DNA of 63,871 nucleotides, counting the filler, from Octopus bimaculoides (taxonomy: Eukaryota): the NCBI RefSeq assembly GCF_001194135.2. It is 7 parts of 6 records of this genome, joined end to end, with 100 filler letters (N's around TTAATTAATTAA, not from the genome) between each part and the next. Parts side by side here need not be neighbours in the genome. Positions count along the whole stretch, not along the records: positions 47,003 to 56,596 come from NC_068981.1; 6 more parts are not named here. One strand, 5' to 3'. The notes below the pieces were generated by a model. The model made no database searches and had not been told where the DNA came from. It was given only the letters and a program-made list of their open reading frames with translations. Position numbers and translations under genes: made by a program. Positions 46,903 through 56,596 of this stretch are shown here, piece after piece; the stretch's first letter is position 1, and every line of letters begins with the position of its first letter.

Positions 46903-47326
46903 NNNNNNNNNNNNNNNNNNNNNNNNNNNNNNNNNNNNNNNNNNNNTTAATTAATTAANNNNNNNNNNNNNNNNNNNNNNNNNNNNNNNNNNNNNNNNNN
47001 NNTATATATATGAATTTATATTTTCAAAAACATCAGTATGCAGAGTAACTTCGAAGTATTGGCAATGTAAACAATCATGATGGCTTAGATATTCGAAACT
47101 TCGATATTCGAAGTCAATGTCAATGCTGTTGTTGTTAAAGAATAATAAAGTTGTACTCTGCCAAATATATTGTGTATTACTTAAATTCAGTCATGGTTTA
47201 TCATAGCATAAAAAGAAACATTAATATATGTGTGTATGTATGTATGTATGTATGTATCTATCTATGTAGTATGTATGCGTGTATTTATCTATCTATCTTT
47301 CACTGTGTCTCTCTCTTATTCTTTTA

Positions 47327-47705
47327 TTCTAAAACTTGTTTCAGTTATTTGTCTGCGACTCTGCCGAAGCACTGCCTTTAGTCTAAGAAATCCCAACTAG
47401 AACGTATTCCTTGTAAGCCTAGTACTTATTCTATCGGGCCTATTTGCCGAACTGCCAAGTTACGGGGACGTCAACACACCAAAATCGGTTGTCAAGTGAC
47501 GATGGGGGACAACACATATACTTAAATATAGATAAATATATACAAGGTGCTGCTTTCAGTTTCCATCTACTAAATCCTCTCACATGGCTTTGGTTGGCTC
47601 GAGGCTGTAGTAAAAGACACTTGGCCAAGGTGCCACGCAGTTGAACTGAACCTAGAAATATGTGGTTGGTAAGTAAGCTTCTTCCCAAAAGCCACTGTTG
47701 CGCCT
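47327..47705 (-). mobile_element. SINE family B, full length, older copy
   Basis: Head AGGCGCAACAGTGGC...GGTTCAGTTCAACTGCGTGGCACCTTGGCCAAG; body TTACGGGGACGTCAACACACC on the + strand. Confidence 0.88.
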
Positions 47706-47713
47706 AAAATATC

Positions 47714-47801
47714 TGCCCCGGGTGTGGATCGTACTCATGACCTTTAGAATCCTCTTATTTGAGACGAGATTATGAAACTGACGTGCTGCCCACTGCGCTA
47801 C
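47714..47801 (-). tRNA. Elongator tRNA-Met(CAU)-like gene with a 21-nt intron; lacks the first 6 nt, probably a pseudogene
   Basis: The minus strand reads G TA GCGC AGTGGGCA GCAC G TCAGT TT CAT A [ATCTCGTCTCAAATAAGAGGA] T TCTAA AGGTC ATGAG TACGATC CACAC CCGGGGC A, then GATATTTT. Without the bracketed insert it matches the eukaryotic elongator tRNA-Met pattern; stem-breaking substitutions are present. Confidence 0.8.
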
Positions 47802-48753
47802 TATAATATATATANNNNNNNNNNNNNNNNNNNNNNNNNNNNNNNNNNNNNNNNNNNNNNNNNNNNNNNNNNNNNNNNNNNNNNNNNNNNNNNNNNNNNN
47901 NNNNNNNNNNNNNNNNNNNNNNNNNNNNNNNNNNNNNNNNNNNNNNNNNNNNNNNNNNNNNNNNNNNNNNNNNNNNNNNNNNNNNNNNNNNNNNNNNNNN
48001 NNNNNNNNNNNNNNNNNNNNNNNNNNNNNNNNNNNNNNNNNNNNNNNNNNNNNNNNNNNNNNNNNNNNNNNNNNNNNNNNNNNNNNNNNNNNNNNNNNNN
48101 NNNNNNNNNNNNNNNNNNNNNNNNNNNNNNNNNNNNNNNNNNNNNNNNNNNNNNNNNNNNNNNNNNNNNNNNNNNNNNNNNNNNNNNNNNNNNNNNNNNN
48201 NNNNNNNNNNNNNNNNNNNNNNNNNNNNNNNNNNNNNNNNNNNNNNNNNNNNNNNNNNNNNNNNNNNNNNNNNNNNNNNNNNNNNNNNNNNNNNNNNNNN
48301 NNNNNNNNNNNNNNNNNNNNNNNNNNNNNNNNNNNNNNNNNNNNNNNNNNNNNNNNNNNNNNNNNNNNNNNNNNNNNNNNNNNNNNNNNNNNNNNNNNNN
48401 NNNNNNNNNNNNNNNNNNNNNNNNNNNNNNNNNNNNNNNNNNNNNNNNNNNNNNNNNNNNNNNNNNNNNNNNNNNNNNNNNNNNNNNNNNNNNNNNNNNN
48501 NNNNNNNNNNNNNNNNNNNNNNNNNNNNNNNNNNNNNNNNNNNNNNNNNNNNNNNNNNNNNNNNNNNNNNNNNNNNNNNNNNNNNNNNNNNNNNNNNNNN
48601 NNNNNNNNNNNNNNNNNNNNNNNNNNNNNNNNNNNNNNNNNNNNNNNNNNNNNNNNNNNNNNNNNNNNNNNNNNNNNNNNNNNNNNNNNNNNNNNNNNNN
48701 NNNNNNNNNNNNNNNNNNNNNNNNNNNNNNNNNNNNNNNNNNNNNNNNNNNNN

Positions 48754-48788
<35 letters not shown>

Positions 48789-50226
48789 TAAACAATAAAT
48801 TAAATTGAGAGATAGGATTGGCAATCCAATAATTCATTTATATTATAATATAACATAACATACTATAAATATAATATAAGATAATATTTAAAAAATCATT
48901 GAAAAAACAAAAGAGCCAACAATTTGTTTCGAGTTATATACATTATTTGATTTATAAACAATTCAATTTTCTGATATAAATCTCATCAGATCTATGGTTT
49001 AACAATAGACAAAATTCTATGTGAAACGACGGCTGGATTGTAACAAAAAAATCAATTCAATTGCCTAGATATTATGCACGTGAGCGTTAACTTTTCAACT
49101 ACATAACAATTACAATTAAAAAACAACAAAATTATATTGGGCACAATAGAATCTACAACTCTCGAAATATATTTCTATATATCTCAAATATTATTAATCC
49201 AGACTCGTTTAGGCTGAAGTATCGTGTATTAAGTATCATGTAAAAATTAAGTATATAAATTAAGTATGAAGTCTTACTTAATCTAGAGAATGTAATAAAA
49301 CGTAATGTTAATATATAAGAACTCTTTCCTTTATTTAAGATTATTGATATTAAAAAAATTGCTTAAAGTAACCGACAAAAAATGTTCTTTATTTAGTTTA
49401 TCAGAGGGAGAATTCCGTAATAAATATGAAGATTAACCTAACAAAAATGTTCTTTATTTACTTAATTTATTGGAGGGAGCATTCGGTAATATATAAACTT
49501 AGAGCTACAATAACTACAATCTATATTAACCCATAGATATAGAGTTAGGCTATAATAATGGATATCAAAATATTACTAGATTTTTTTAGGTGCAACCAGA
49601 TTTGAAGTTACTTGAATAAGGATTATTGACAGTAACTAACAAGTAGATGTCCCTATATTTGTATATTATGTAAGGAAAACCTCAATAAATAAAAAAATTA
49701 ATATAAACAAAACGAGTATATCGAAAACTATAATTTATATTATTGTACTTTTTATATAAAGGACTATAAATAGTATATGTCAAAATGTTATTAATTCTTC
49801 CAGAAGTAACAAAACAATATTGTTGTAATATGAATACGCGTTATAAAATCTAGAATGCTAGAATTGTTATTGTTCTTATTAAATCTAGATAGTAAATCAA
49901 ATAAATCTATTCAATTTTTATTATTATTATTATTGTTGTTGTTGTTGTTGCTGTTGTTGTTGTTGTTGTTGTTGATGATGCTATTATTTATCAACATCAA
50001 TTAATTAATAAATTAAATGAATGTATTTATACATATAATTATTAAGAATAATGAAGAAATCTTATCTGTAGTAATTAATATTAAATTAGTAATATAATGA
50101 TGCATTTTACAGTAACTACAATAATCTGTACTAGAAAATTCTGAATTAATCCACTAAAAAATTAATTGAACATTATTATATAGACTAAGATAACAAAATT
50201 TAAAGATTTATATACAACCCCCAACG

Positions 50227-50284
<58 letters not shown>

Positions 50285-50409
50285 TGCACACACGCGTATA
50301 TACATATACATAGGTATATACATACAAGGAAATATATAGATGTATACAACCAAAATCTACACATAGATATACAAACCTATATAGAAACATATATGTTCTT
50401 CCTCTCCTT

Positions 50410-51244: not shown

Positions 51245-51254
51245 NNNNNNNNNN

Positions 51255-51290
<36 letters not shown>

Positions 51291-51437
51291 TATCATCATC
51301 ATCAGCTCTACATGACCAAATTAGATATTTTGAATCTTAAATGAAAATTTACATGTCACAGTACACATAATTATCTGTATGTGTATTTATATAGATGTCT
51401 ATGTGTGATGTGTGTGTGAGCGTACTTATACATATAA

Positions 51438-51477
<40 letters not shown>

Positions 51478-51483
<6 letters not shown>

Positions 51484-51646
51484 ACTTGGGGATGGTCATA
51501 TTGCCAGTTTAGCCAATAAAAACACACGCACTGTATATTTGGTGTTAATTTTTTTTTTTTTTCAGCTTTATATTACATTAATCTTAATCTTAATCTTATT
51601 TCGGCCAGAGTTCTTTCGTCACACTTCTGTGACCTCATCAGTGGTC
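51478..51646 (-). mobile_element. Third Penelope pLTR copy, cut by gap
   Basis: GTTGTACTTGGGGATGGTCATATT...AATAAAAACACACGCACT...CTTTCGTCACAC is homologous to 15815-15955 and 31310-31450. Confidence 0.8.
51603..51646 (-). ncRNA. Minimal type I hammerhead ribozyme with intact catalytic core
   Basis: GACCA CUGAUGA G GUCACA-GAAG-UGUGAC GAA AGAACU C UGGCC: core CUGAUGA/GAAA, 6-bp stem II, CUC cleavage triplet, CCA/UGG stem I. Confidence 0.78.
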
Positions 51647-54078
51647 NNNNNNNNNNNNNNNNNNNNNNNNNNNNNNNNNNNNNNNNNNNNNNNNNNNNNN
51701 NNNNNNNNNNNNNNNNNNNNNNNNNNNNNNNNNNNNNNNNNNNNNNNNNNNNNNNNNNNNNNNNNNNNNNNNNNNNNNNNNNNNNNNNNNNNNNNNNNNN
51801 NNNNNNNNNNNNNNNNNNNNNNNNNNNNNNNNNNNNNNNNNNNNNNNNNNNNNNNNNNNNNNNNNNNNNNNNNNNNNNNNNNNNNNNNNNNNNNNNNNNN
51901 NNNNNNNNNNNNNNNNNNNNNNNNNNNNNNNNNNNNNNNNNNNNNNNNNNNNNNNNNNNNNNNNNNNNNNNNNNNNNNNNNNNNNNNNNNNNNNNNNNNN
52001 NNNNNNNNNNNNNNNNNNNNNNNNNNNNNNNNNNNNNNNNNNNNNNNNNNNNNNNNNNNNNNNNNNNNNNNNNNNNNNNNNNNNNNNNNNNNNNNNNNNN
52101 NNNNNNNNNNNNNNNNNNNNNNNNNNNNNNNNNNNNNNNNNNNNNNNNNNNNNNNNNNNNNNNNNNNNNNNNNNNNNNNNNNNNNNNNNNNNNNNNNNNN
52201 NNNNNNNNNNNNNNNNNNNNNNNNNNNNNNNNNNNNNNNNNNNNNNNNNNNNNNNNNNNNNNNNNNNNNNNNNNNNNNNNNNNNNNNNNNNNNNNNNNNN
52301 NNNNNNNNNNNNNNNNNNNNNNNNNNNNNNNNNNNNNNNNNNNNNNNNNNNNNNNNNNNNNNNATATATATATATATATATATACAGACACGCGCGTGAG
52401 CAGGTATATTTGCGGTAGCAATCTATAACGCATGATGCATTAATATGCATAACTTCCTACTCATAGATGCAGGCACATTGGGTTCGAGCTATAAAAATGT
52501 TTCATAAAACCTACGTTTATCGGAGCTTGCTCGTGTGTCTTCCTAGGTTTGGATATATTGCAATGTTTCAGATATTTAGTTTCATTTAAATCCATATGTA
52601 ATCTTTTATGCCATGGGTATTTTTGTTTATATGTAGACTTTTCATCATATACACCACCTCTATTTCTTTTATTTTAAGATTCTATAGCCAGGAATCTGTT
52701 ATTATTCAATGCGAGATTCCTTTTGTTTCACAGTTGAGTGTCCTTCGAGTGAAATTTGTCACGTAGAAATAAGTTTCGTAGTTTGCCCGTTATTTATAAC
52801 ATGGCCATTATACTTCAGTAAATTGTTGTATTAAATTTTAGTGGCAGGTAGCCGTGCAGCAAATATTCTGGCACTCGAAGTGGAATTGACTGTTAAAATA
52901 TGGTTTCTTGAACAATGTTTATTGAACGCGCTAACAAGAGAGCCTTTACGTAATAGTTTTAACGGATAGAAATAGTAACAGACCTCCTGAAATTCTACCA
53001 TCATTTACATGGTGGCTTCGATCATAATTCCTATGTTGATAAAGGCTAAACCTTGGCAAGTATATTTTATAAAACATTTGGCGTTGAAGGAGGTAGTAAG
53101 GTCTTAGATAGAACATCTTAGATAGAATATATGCTTCTTCTGCATATTGCAGAAGATGACTTGGCAATTTCAAATGCGCCTGTTCTGTCTCTTAGGAGTG
53201 TCTTTCTTTAGCAGCACTTATTCATAGTCCCATAACTCAGTTACATGGTGCTGAATATTTCCATAACAAAACTTCACGCAGTAATTACTAATACGTAGCT
53301 AAGACCAGATGTAATTTAGGTAAACGTAGACAGCACATATCTGATGTTTGAAATTACATTCAAACAATCGCTAAACCCGTAGCTATCTATCTATCCCTCT
53401 ATATATCTGTCTATCCATCTCTATCCATCTGTCTACCTCTCTCTATCTCTCTCCATATATATATATATATATATATATAGTAGTCTTTGTGAGTGTTACG
53501 GTCATATAGGTAACCAAATGTCTTGCAGAAAACTGTCAATCGTGGTTTGTAGGACTGGAAGCTGTATTGCTAGATCTGCATTATTTAGAAATTGAATTCT
53601 GCTATCTACTGTTACTATGCGAAAAAGAATGTGTTAAACAAGAATGTTCTACCCTACTTGCATGACATTAAATATTAAGAGTGTGATATCTCACACACGT
53701 AGAATATCACAAAACGTCTCAGGGATTGTGGAGAAATAGCTAAATTGAAACACATATGAATATATGTACAGGCACGCACACACAAATGACATATATATGT
53801 ATGTATACTTGTCATCATTCCGTTTTAGTTCAAGATTTCTTACAAATAGAGAAAGAGCTGATTCCTAACCAGGCTCCAAGTTTCCTTCACTGGAATTTCA
53901 ACATCAACAACAGGGTATTTTTGTAAGTATGTATATATGTAATGTATGCATGCATATGTGCAGATTTGTACGTTTAGTTTTATACATGTATTCACATGTA
54001 TACATTTGCATATGTAGACATGCCCATATATATTTGGTCATGTATGTATGTATGTATGTATGCATGTATGTATGCATA

Positions 54079-54238
54079 TGGGCGTAGGCGTGGTTGTGTG
54101 GTAAGATGTTTGCTTCCCAGCATGATTCTGGGTACTGTCCCTCAGCGTGGCATCTTGGGCAAGTGTCTGCTACTATAGACTCGAGCCAGCCAAAGTCCAG
54201 TGAGTCGATTTTCTAGAAACCGAAACAAGTCCGTCATA
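54079..54238 (+). mobile_element. SINE family B head, degenerate
   Basis: GGCGTAGGCGTGGTTGTGTGGTAAGATGTTTGCTTCCCAG...GCGTGGCATCTTGGGCAAGTGTCT. Confidence 0.85.
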
Positions 54239-56552
54239 GAAATTTGAACTGTTAGAGTATATTTATCCATAAATGACCATTCTCTGAAAATTGCAGTTAA
54301 GATATTCTGTAACTTCCAATTTTTCATTCTATATAAATCATACTCACTTTTTTTTTATTATACATCTTCATTTTCTTTATCCTTTCACGTTTAGCTTTTA
54401 TCATACAAGAACACTGTATCCGATGTTATGGTCATTGCTTCGTTCTTTCAGTTTCCAGATATGGAAAAGACATTCCACAACGTAAGCCATTGCTATTGTT
54501 TGAATTTTGTTATTCTTTGTTCATTTTTGTTTTTGGTATTTGTAACTCAAGGAAGTTCCATGGCCTTATAACGTTTACTTGTATTTACCTATAACTGTCT
54601 TATTTTGCATTACTGAGTTTATATTTAACTTTATTGATTATCGATTTCATGTTGAATATAAGTTCTAATGGTCAAGTGCCTCTCTCTTCTTTAATGTAAA
54701 ACATAACTGGATAGTCATAATTAATGCCTCAGTACATTATTCACCCCTACAGCAGTATTTCATGTAGGAATCCTTATAATGCCCGATATTCAGGTATAAT
54801 TTGTCTTTTATCTCTATCTAACAGTGAAATGATTACATAAGGGTGAATCTACGCTAGAATGGGTTTAAAGAGTTATGGTAATGGCACTATTTCCATAAGC
54901 TTGAGTTTGTAAATTGTAGGAAATTTCTCCCTGTAGTTGCTATCAGCTAAGACTCAGTTGGACTAACACGCTGCTCTACCAAATGTTTCGTTAGATTATT
55001 TTTATATATGAGTCACGTTTTGATTGATATTGTGAGTAAATTTTCCAAATCCTTTAATGTTTTAAAAGTCTTTATTTCATGTATCTCATTTGTCTCGTGA
55101 AATTACTTTTGAATGCCTGCATCTATGTTCAGTGATGTCTGTAAAATCTTCGTTGAAAGTGTCTATGAGATACTCCCAAAAAGTAATTCCGTCAGCAGTA
55201 TTTTCCTTGTGAAATGCGGTAAATATATCGTATCAATACTAGCTGATTTTGGAATTGAAGAATATTTTCTATGACCTCTTATATAAAGGTCAAACAGATA
55301 TCATATGTCTACTCTATCGCAATAGCCTAATCAAGACGACGAAACTGTCCGTGGTACCAGATTTATTAATATATGTCTATGATCAAAGCCTTTTCAAAGG
55401 GTGTCGGCCTGGATTAACAATTATATCAAAATGTAACTAATAAATACTAACGTATCTGTTGGTGAATGGTAGAGAGTGCAAAAATTGCAGCCGGGATATA
55501 CATGAGAATCGAAAATAGTGATTTGTGAATACAACTCTGGAAGTGATGTTTACTGTGTTGCAATGGGTACATTTTCAATTCCAGGTGTCATCCTCATTTT
55601 TTTCATATTATTCTGCATATTCGTTTAAAGCTTATTTTCGTTCACGCTCTTTCACTTATTTCTTTTTCATTTTCGCATTTTCAATTCGCAAATATATTGA
55701 GCTATTTTCCGATGCAGCGTAGATTAATTTAACAAGGTTACTTTTGAAGATGTGATAACAGGTTTTCTGATAAATGATGGATTAATAACTTTAGAAACTC
55801 TTTTGTTACATTGGATTTAACCGTTAAGATTGAATGCATGGATCATACTTTATGCTATATTTCACACGCACACACACATAGGCATACATACAAAATGCAT
55901 ACATGCAAACACACACACACACACATATATGTACGTACACAGACACACATCTATTTCTGTGTGTATCTTTTTATATACGGAGATAGAGAGAAAGTGCAGG
56001 AGAGAGAGAAATACATAACTATATATACGCAATTGTTTACGTATACTCATTTGTACGTTTGTATATGTATGCACGAGTGCATGCGTATGCGTTTGTCTGT
56101 GCGTGAACACTTGATTTATGATTCATCGGGATGTATGTTTGTCATGGAAATTTAAATGTATTTCTATAATAAATATGTATTAGGAAAAGCACAGAATTCA
56201 GCATTAACATCCATATTGAAAAGAACTTGTATATATATGAGATTAAAATACATACTCAATTGATTGGAATAAAATGATTTTTAATTAAGTGAAATAAATT
56301 TATTAAACGGTACGAATATATAATTCAATAAAAGCAATTTTCTATTTAAAAGTTAATAGAAGAACGTAATAAGTGAAATTAAAGGCTGCAAAAGAAAATC
56401 TCACATAAAATTACCATTCAAACTTCGTATACACATAAATATATACGTGTGCGCGCGTGTGTGTGCATATATCTATGTATGTATGCATGTATGTAAGCAT
56501 GTATGTATGCATGTATGTATGCATGTATGTATATATGTATGTATGCATGTGA

Positions 56553-56596
<44 letters not shown>

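What the first reader, a model, noticed from the sequence alone, without database searches (positions are those of the whole stretch)
47706..47801. Intron-containing elongator tRNA-Met(CAU) gene relic in an animal genome
Seen: a tRNA-Met cloverleaf (CAT anticodon at 47774-47772) with 21 extra nt (47770-47750) exactly after position 37. The insert contains TAAGAG, a one-mismatch complement of the ancestral anticodon-loop CTCATA, and its third-last base (G) is placed to form the anticodon-intron pair with position 32. There is a U31/U39 apposition, no encoded CCA, and a TTTT terminator-like run follows the 3' end. Known: 37/38 introns with an anticodon-intron pair are TSEN substrates; in well-studied animals they occur mainly in Tyr-GUA, Ile-UAU, Leu-CAA and Arg-UCU tRNAs, while intron-bearing elongator Met is typical of plants. 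Inference: this lineage has or had a spliced tRNA-Met gene family, and this is a DNA-level duplicate that decayed (broken D, anticodon and T stems; first 6 nt replaced by a TA microsatellite beside a gap).
Basis: partly seen in the sequence, partly recalled or inferred. Interest (0 to 1): 0.72.

Follow-up and report, generated by a model that had tools for sequence, protein, structure and literature searches.

The report
Dead intron-bearing methionine tRNA gene copy
This is a decayed copy of a methionine tRNA gene in an octopus-type genome that still carries its small intron; the same intron type occurs in intact genes of a coral and many other marine-animal contigs, so the relic is real but fairly ordinary.

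Summary
On the minus strand, 47801-47714 is a decayed elongator tRNA-Met(CAT). It has positions 7-73, the anticodon at 47774-47772, a 21-nt insert at 47770-47750, no CCA, and TTTT at 47709-47706. Standard callers (ARAGORN, Rfam tRNA) miss it.

A pattern scan of metagenome contigs found at least 135 intact animal-type tRNA-Met(CAT) genes with 13-25-nt inserts in the same slot. Nearly all inserts start ATC and carry (G)AG at -5..-3. C32 pairs with G(-3) in 98 of 101 genes.

A covariance model built from 101 of these genes hits the window at 46 bits (E about 1e-12), with the insert in the intron slot. One carrier contig is coral DNA: the Orbicella faveolata reference scaffold holds three such genes.

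So the relic descends from an intron-bearing tRNA-Met gene. Such genes are not plant-specific among eukaryotes.

The adjacent SINE is 78% identical to Octopus bimaculoides copies. It starts just after the T-run and never carries this unit in four other copies.

Not tested: whether cephalopods keep intact, spliced copies. No cephalopod tRNA-Met gene could be fetched.

Verdict: a pseudogene of a known kind, of modest interest.

The parts
47714..47801 (-). Decayed elongator tRNA-Met(CAT) gene, tRNA positions 7-73 including the insert
   Evidence: 57/66 identities to human-type tRNA-Met, score 81 against shuffles at 22.5 +/- 2.8. Covariance model R1 gives 46.1 bits, E = 1.3e-12 over 47714-47807.
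47771..47801 (-). 5' exon remnant (positions 7-37). The A box TAGCGCAGTGG is intact. G24->A breaks D-stem pair 11:24, and C32 has become T.
   Evidence: Sequence read; alignment to the model consensus.
47772..47774 (-). Anticodon CAT (positions 34-36)
   Evidence: One search places CAT at 47774-47772.
47750..47770 (-). 21-nt intron-like insert ATCTCGTCTCAAATAAGAGGA. It has the 5' ATC and GAG at -5..-3 of the family, and G(-3) lies opposite position 32. It contains an internal TCTCG/TCTCA 5-nt tandem.
   Evidence: The intron-end profile built from 101 introns scores it at 8.9 bits (family median 12.4). P = 2e-4 for random 21-mers, and P = 0.009 for the 3' end alone. The model places it in the intron slot.
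47714..47749 (-). 3' exon (positions 38-73) with A38->T, G42->A, G49->A, T55->A (B box) and T62->A. It ends GGGGCA without CCA.
   Evidence: T54/T55 are invariant in all 101 family genes.
47706..47709 (-). TTTT run 4 nt after position 73, read as a Pol III terminator
   Evidence: The intact family genes also show T-runs within about 10 nt of their 3' ends.
47802..47814 (-). TA-rich repeat standing where acceptor positions 1-6 should be
   Evidence: The model aligns AUUAUA here with six unpaired acceptor positions.
47815..48753 (.). Assembly gap (939 N) directly 5' of the relic. It hides whatever lies upstream.
47334..47704 (-). Context, not part of the relic: an octopus-type tRNA-like SINE copy starting GGCGCAACAGTGGC one base after the T-run
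   Evidence: 78% identity over 393 nt to Octopus bimaculoides CM046623.1 (L124 20070-20462). The 5' ends of three L124 copies and the window's second copy are preceded by unrelated sequence.

Best explanation
The unit is a dead copy of a nuclear, Pol III-transcribed elongator tRNA-Met(CAU) gene that carried a short protein-spliced intron in the anticodon loop.

In the living ancestor, internal A and B boxes drove transcription to the downstream T-run. The pre-tRNA paired C32-U33-C34 with the GAG near the intron's 3' end (the anticodon-intron pair). The tRNA splicing endonuclease cut after position 37 and 21 nt further on, and the RtcB-type ligase joined the halves. These processing steps are inferred from how such introns are handled in other eukaryotes; they are not shown here.

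The copy then decayed in place:
- It has 8 substitutions in 67 exon positions, two of them CpG-type.
- Four stem pairs are broken, and T55 of the B box is lost.
- The first six bases are replaced by a TA repeat next to a gap.
- An unrelated SINE is inserted just after the terminator.

It is most likely non-functional today.
For: Shown by tool results:
- tRNA-Met homology is far above chance.
- A model built only from intact intron-bearing tRNA-Met genes finds the relic at 46.1 bits, E = 1.3e-12, full length, with the insert in the intron slot.
- In 101 intact genes the intron starts A/T/C in 101/100/99 cases. It has G at -3 in 98, A or G at -4 in 99, and G at -5 in 68. C32:G(-3) pairs in 98/101, and U31.U39 is unpaired in 101/101. 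The relic has every one of these features.
- The relic's insert scores 8.9 bits on the intron-end profile, P = 2e-4.
- The family genes look functional. Acceptor pairs 5:68 and 7:66 covary (24 and 36 double changes). Rfam tRNA scores the coral copies at 47-50 bits, above its threshold of 29.
- At least one carrier is a true animal genome, Orbicella faveolata scaffold MZGG01001766.1.
- The relic's acceptor type (G7 with CCGGGGC) and C20 match the subgroup whose introns are 17-25 nt long.
- Decay is shown by ARAGORN and Rfam failing to call it.

From the literature: genes for one isodecoder in a genome tend all to have an intron or all to lack it (Yoshihisa 2014, PMC4090602). One intron-bearing relic therefore suggests an intron-bearing family.
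Against: - No intact intron-bearing tRNA-Met gene from a cephalopod was seen. About 37 kb of octopus-type DNA gave no hit.
- The insert position is ambiguous at DNA level, and 37/38 needs an extra A38->T change.
- Minimum-free-energy folding of the anticodon-intron region is no better than shuffles, both for the relic and for intact genes. Structure support therefore rests on conservation, not on energy.
- Splicing has not been shown for any of these genes.
Confidence: 0.85

Rival explanations
1. An intronless tRNA-Met pseudogene picked up an unrelated 21-nt insertion in the anticodon arm after it died. The source would be filler DNA, slippage, or a local duplication flanked by the TCT microhomology.
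For: The most parsimonious DNA alignment puts the insert at 38/39-42/43, bounded by TCT...TCT. The insert has an internal TCTCG/TCTCA tandem. The copy is heavily decayed, so indels are expected.
Against: The ATC-start ambiguity is a property of all 101 genuine introns, not a peculiarity of this copy. The 3' end of the insert is free of that ambiguity and still fits the family (GAG at -5..-3, P = 0.009). Similarity of the insert to the preceding anticodon arm is no better than shuffles (P = 0.58). An insertion landing in this 5-6-nt slot of a 72-nt gene is itself roughly a 7% event.
Confidence: 0.08
2. The unit is one member of a high-copy tRNA-Met-derived repeat (a SINE head or tRNA-like retroposon), not a relic of a bona fide tRNA gene.
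For: It lies directly against a SINE in a repeat-rich genome, and genome-wide copy number could not be measured.
Against: The adjacent SINE starts at GGCG(C/T)AGG with unrelated upstream sequence in three O. bimaculoides copies and in the window's second copy. There is no second copy of the unit in the 9.6-kb piece and none in about 37 kb of octopus-type DNA. The unit ends in its own T-run. Even a tRNA-Met-derived repeat would have had to start from an intron-bearing gene.
Confidence: 0.05
3. The resemblance to tRNA-Met arose by chance in AT-rich repeat DNA.
For: Standard tRNA finders do not call it.
Against: The alignment score is about 20 SD above shuffles. Model E = 1.3e-12. BLAST finds the same 96 nt in 50 or more independent tRNA-Met genes at 75-81% identity.
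Confidence: 0.01

Closest known systems
Intron-containing elongator tRNA-Met(CAU) genes of plants
   Same: Same isoacceptor. A short intron placed after position 37 in the anticodon loop, removed by the protein tRNA splicing endonuclease.
   Different: The exons here are animal-type: 57/66 identical to human-type tRNA-Met, with CGTCAGTCTCATA in the family. The intron belongs to a class with 5' AUC and (G)AG at -5..-3, found here in a coral genome and in marine contigs. No homology to plant introns was tested.
Intron-bearing tRNA-Met(CAT) genes of the coral Orbicella faveolata and of marine host-associated metagenome contigs
   Same: Same exon sequence family, same intron slot, same intron ends, the same U31.U39 and 32:(-3) pair, and the same T-run terminator.
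   Different: Those genes are intact: 93-113 bits to R1 and 47-50 bits to Rfam tRNA. The window copy scores 46 bits, has lost its 5' acceptor strand and the B-box T55, and has four broken pairs. The coral introns are 13-14 nt, whereas the relic's is 21 nt.
Canonical animal intron-containing tRNAs (Tyr-GUA, Ile-UAU, Leu-CAA, Arg-UCU)
   Same: Position of the intron, the anticodon-intron pair, and the presumed TSEN/RtcB processing (established knowledge; Yoshihisa 2014, PMC4090602; Lu et al. 2015, PMC4536317).
   Different: A different isoacceptor, not on the usual list drawn from vertebrate, fly and worm genomes.
tRNA pseudogenes / tRNA gene relics
   Same: Broken stems, a damaged promoter box, CpG-type changes, and missed by tRNA callers.
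   Different: It retains a recognisable intron, which makes it informative about the ancestral gene family.

Membership tests
Functional cytoplasmic elongator tRNA-Met(CAU) gene | Complete cloverleaf with a 7-bp acceptor stem, callable by tRNA models | tested here: not met
   Positions 1-6 are absent, and pairs 11:24, 28:42, 49:65 and 52:62 are broken. ARAGORN and Rfam RF00005 give no call even at E<=10.
Functional cytoplasmic elongator tRNA-Met(CAU) gene | CAT anticodon and an elongator-type (not initiator-type) body | tested here: met
   CAT lies at 47774-47772. The body is 57/66 identical to elongator tRNA-Met. It has U31.U39 as in all 101 family genes. Animal-type initiator genes on the same contigs look quite different.
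Functional cytoplasmic elongator tRNA-Met(CAU) gene | Intact internal Pol III A and B boxes plus a T-run terminator | tested here: inconclusive
   The A box TAGCGCAGTGG fits TRGCNNAGTGG. The B box has T55->A at a position invariant in 101 genes. TTTT is present at 47709-47706. Transcription was not testable.
tRNA gene with a canonical protein-spliced intron (37/38) | Insert located one base 3' of the anticodon | tested here: inconclusive
   Placements from 37/38 through 42/43 are near-equivalent in DNA alignment, and 37/38 costs one more mismatch. The model puts the insert in the family's intron slot. The same ambiguity exists in every intact member.
tRNA gene with a canonical protein-spliced intron (37/38) | Anticodon-intron base pair between position 32 and intron position -3 | tested here: met
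   The relic has T32 opposite G(-3), a wobble. The family has C32:G(-3) in 98/101 genes.
tRNA gene with a canonical protein-spliced intron (37/38) | Splice sites presented in bulges next to a helix | tested here: inconclusive
   MFE folds of the anticodon-intron region are no better than shuffles, for the relic and for intact genes. RNAalifold did not predict the anticodon-intron helix.
tRNA gene with a canonical protein-spliced intron (37/38) | Intron actually removed from the transcript | not testable with these tools
   No RNA data were available.
Animal elongator-Met intron class defined here (AUC...(G)AG NN, 13-25 nt) | 5' ATC, G at -3, A/G at -4, usually G at -5, length 13-25 nt | tested here: met
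   The insert is ATC...GAGGA and 21 nt long. Its profile score is 8.9 bits against a family range of -2.3 to 17.2, P = 2e-4.
tRNA-derived SINE head | The unit recurs joined to a common SINE body | tested here: not met
   Four other copies of the adjacent SINE lack it. There are no other copies in the piece or in about 37 kb of octopus-type DNA. Genome-wide copy number was not testable.
Retro-pseudogene of a mature tRNA | No intron, templated CCA, often an A-rich tail | tested here: not met
   The intron-like insert is retained. The 3' end reads GGGGCA-GATATTTT with no CCA.

The most novel reading that the evidence does not exclude
An intron in elongator tRNA-Met, with conserved ends (5' AUC repeating exon positions 38-40, and GAG pairing with C32-U33-C34), is an old and widespread feature of marine animals. 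Here it is verified in one coral and seen in three further exon types of unverified hosts. It would have been lost from vertebrates, insects and nematodes, and cephalopods would still splice such genes. The conserved masking of C34 by the intron could mean that it times or directs a modification of the wobble base. That last point is speculation from general knowledge of intron-dependent modifications.
Probability: 0.4. Interest if true: 0.5.

Novelty: new member of a known kind. Interest (0 to 1): 0.35.

Why it matters
The relic itself does nothing. Its value is as a marker: it indicates that the octopus lineage had elongator tRNA-Met genes with an intron.

Following it up showed that such genes are common in marine-animal DNA, including a coral reference genome. 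They share a conserved intron architecture that the usual lists drawn from human, fly and worm omit.

That bears on how tRNA intron repertoires are gained and lost in animals. It also matters for annotation: ARAGORN parsed many of the 13-14-nt introns as long variable arms. And it gives extra substrates for studies of TSEN specificity and of circular tRNA introns.

Tried and rejected
- ARAGORN, with and without the intron option and with lowered thresholds, and Rfam at E<=10, did not call the relic. At 80% threshold ARAGORN returned only spurious calls elsewhere.
The queries were the translation across the relic, the SINE ORF, and two putative exons.
- Looking up a 115-aa window ORF in the assembly collection found nothing.
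- A profile-free phmmer search with the SINE ORF gave 8 weak hits. One led to Octopus bimaculoides chromosome DNA (L124) and the rest to about 1-kb Logan contigs. None held a tRNA-Met-like unit.
- Scans of viral contigs found nothing. The prokaryote genome scan found one contaminated SUP05 contig.
- Host identification by exact protein look-up worked for one coral contig only. It failed for the GCCTCGG-type contigs most like the relic.
- Accession-prefix and topic searches of the paper library found no description of an animal elongator-Met intron. Absence from this library is not proof that it is undescribed; GtRNAdb may list such genes.
- The tandem-duplication origin of the insert was rejected (P = 0.58).
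- Thermodynamic folding gave no signal.
- A target-site duplication for the SINE could not be defined, because its 3' end runs into microsatellite.

Full report
**What is there**

On the minus strand the sequence reads:

TATATATATTATAG TAGCGCAGTGGGCAGCACGTCAGTTTCATA ATCTCGTCTCAAATAAGAGGA TTCTAAAGGTCATGAGTACGATCCACACCCGGGGCA GATATTTT AGGCGCAACAGTGGC...

The score is 81. In 300 shuffles of the neighbourhood, scored on both strands, the mean was 22.5, the SD 2.8 and the maximum 36.

- CAT at 47774-47772
- insert at 47770-47750
- position 7 at 47801
- position 73 at 47714
- TTTT at 47709-47706
- no CCA

Positions 1-6 are replaced by TA repeat abutting a 939-N gap at 47815-48753.

The copy is clearly dead:
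- ARAGORN finds nothing, even with introns allowed and thresholds lowered.
- The Rfam tRNA model finds nothing at E<=10 in the piece or in a 167-nt sub-window. Intact relatives score 47-50 bits on that same model.

**Is the insert an intron?**

At DNA level its position is ambiguous. Any placement from 38/39 to 42/43 costs one exon mismatch, while the canonical 37/38 costs two. I therefore looked for intact relatives.

I scanned metagenome contigs for animal-type exon sequence with at least 6 extra bases between CATA and AGGTC. The pattern was CGTCAGTYTCATA N{12,40} AGGTCRTGAGTWCGATCC. Of these, 101 are distinct sequences with at least 6/7 acceptor pairs.

The pattern did not constrain the insert, yet the inserts share these features:
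- Length is 13-25 nt.
- They start A, T, C in 101, 100 and 99 of 101 cases.
- They have G at -3 in 98, A or G at -4 in 99, and G at -5 in 68.

On the alignment:
- C32:G(-3) pairs in 98/101 and U33:A/G(-4) in 99/101.
- U31.U39 is never a standard pair.
- Acceptor pairs 5:68 and 7:66 show 24 and 36 double compensatory changes. This marks the genes as real tRNA genes under selection.

The window's insert, ATC-TCGTCTCAAATAA-GAG-GA, has all of these features. On a profile of the intron ends it scores 8.9 bits, against a family median of 12.4. P = 2e-4 for random 21-mers of local composition. For the 3' end alone, which is free of the ATC ambiguity, P = 0.009.

A covariance model built from the 101 genes (R1) finds the window at 47714-47807(-). 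The score is 46.1 bits, E = 1.3e-12, over the full model length, with the insert in the intron slot. The next hit in the piece is 7 bits.

The ATC start explains the positional ambiguity. In every member the intron begins by repeating exon positions 38-40.

**Are the relatives animal genes?**

One contig (L052) encodes an ORF identical to XP_020622617.1 of the coral Orbicella faveolata. The reference scaffold MZGG01001766.1 (L122) carries three intron-bearing Met-type genes within 6 kb. They score 93-102 bits to R1 and 47-50 bits to Rfam tRNA. Two tRNA-Lys(UUU) genes lie among them.

Weaker indications for other contigs:
- Some carry animal-type initiator tRNA-Met genes (the 'animal-type' reading is my own knowledge).
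- Two carry a Gfi-like zinc-finger ORF (this is my reading and was not tool-tested).

Three main exon types occur: GCCTCGT/ACGGGGC (coral), GCCTAGG/CCTGGGC and GCCTCGG/CCGGGGC. The relic (G7, CCGGGGC, C20) belongs to the last type, whose introns are mostly 17-25 nt long. The hosts of that group could not be identified. One such gene sits on a low-coverage contig of a SUP05 symbiont assembly, evidently host contamination.

**Context**

One base after the T-run a SINE begins (GGCGCAACAGTGGC..., 47704 down to about 47334). A phmmer search with its ORF led to Octopus bimaculoides GCA_001194135.2. A full-length copy there is 78% identical to the window's over 393 nt.

Three O. bimaculoides copies, and the window's second, truncated copy (54081-54240, +), all start at GGCG(C/T)AGG with unrelated upstream sequence. 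So the tRNA-Met unit is not the SINE's head. The SINE simply inserted next to the terminator.

About 37 kb of octopus-type DNA contained no further R1 hit. That sample is far too small to bound genome-wide copy number.

**Mechanism**

Shown:
- descent from an intron-bearing elongator tRNA-Met gene family
- decay: 8 of 67 exon positions changed, two of them CpG-type; four stem pairs broken; T55->A in the B box; the 5' acceptor strand lost

Inferred from established knowledge (Yoshihisa 2014, PMC4090602; Lu et al. 2015, PMC4536317):
- The ancestor was transcribed by Pol III from its A and B boxes to the T-run.
- It was cut by the tRNA splicing endonuclease after position 37 and at the 3' bulge set by the 32:(-3) pair.
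- The halves were joined by RtcB.

The same review notes that all genes of one isodecoder in a genome tend to share intron status. That makes an intron-bearing family in this lineage likely, at least at the time the copy died.

**Rivals**

- A post-mortem random insertion is disfavoured by the fit of the insert's 3' end and by the slot coincidence. A tandem-duplication origin is rejected (P = 0.58).
- A high-copy repeat is not excluded genome-wide, but it has no support.
- Chance resemblance is excluded.

**Limits**

- No RNA evidence exists for splicing of any of these genes.
- Energy-based folding gives no support.
- I found no paper in the held library describing an elongator-Met intron in animals. 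Database annotations may already show it.

**Verdict**

This is a pseudogene of a known kind. The modest added value is the recognition of a conserved elongator-Met intron class in marine animals.

Noticed in passing
window 47334-47704 (-) and 54081-54240 (+): Two copies of an octopus-type tRNA-like SINE, with head GGCG(C/T)AGG(A/C)GTGG.TGTGTGGTAAG. The first is near full length and 78% identical to a copy in Octopus bimaculoides CM046623.1. It begins one base after the relic's T-run. The second is a truncated head. No target-site duplication could be defined because the 3' end runs into microsatellite.
   Followed up: partly
L001-L121 (metagenome and one prokaryote-assembly contig); L122 13874-13959(-), 16872-16957(+), 19138-19223(+): Intron-bearing animal-type elongator tRNA-Met genes are abundant in marine host-associated contigs and occur in three exon types. 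Introns are 13-25 nt and share AUC...(G)AG NN ends. They often lie in tandem arrays, for example three copies about 1 kb apart in L025 and a 2.9-kb duplicated unit in L083. tRNA-Lys(UUU) is a frequent neighbour (31 calls). Only the coral Orbicella faveolata was verified as a host.
   Followed up: partly
L122 19138-19223 (+): One coral copy of the Met-type gene with intron has anticodon CGT (ARAGORN calls it tRNA-Thr), plus C32->G and a D-loop change. It is either a decaying copy or an anticodon-shifted one.
   Followed up: no
L009, L026, L064 and other coral-type loci: The 13-14-nt introns begin ATCTGA(A), a full copy of exon positions 38-43/44. As a result ARAGORN reports 48 of the intron-bearing genes as intronless 86-94-nt tRNA-Met with a long variable arm. 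This is an annotation pitfall, and the direct repeat at both splice sites may say something about how the intron arose.
   Followed up: partly
L121 (FXLX01000321.1, 'uncultured SUP05 cluster bacterium isolate CRYPA'): A 1-kb contig with coverage 0.55 in a bacterial symbiont assembly carries a eukaryotic intron-bearing tRNA-Met gene with a Pol III T-run. It is almost certainly host contamination of the bin.
   Followed up: no
window 47224-47295, 50224-50347, 51345-51534, 53933-54084, 55869-55976, 56415-56596: Rfam 'evalue' hits to mir-297, mir-3149, mir-466, mir-1277, sno_ZL1 and others all lie on TA/TG/TATG microsatellites and are far below the gathering scores. They are artefacts of low-complexity sequence.
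   Followed up: yes
window 53829-53914 (+) and 54452-54481 (+): Two short open segments with acceptor- and donor-like borders read in frame QDFLQIEKELIPNQAPSFLHWNFNINNR / FPDMEKTFHN. They could be exons of a gene on the + strand. A word-index protein search found nothing.
   Followed up: partly
window 47815-48753, 51245-51254, 51647-52363: Three assembly gaps fall in the 9.6-kb piece, each flanked by microsatellite. The first hides the relic's 5' side.
   Followed up: no
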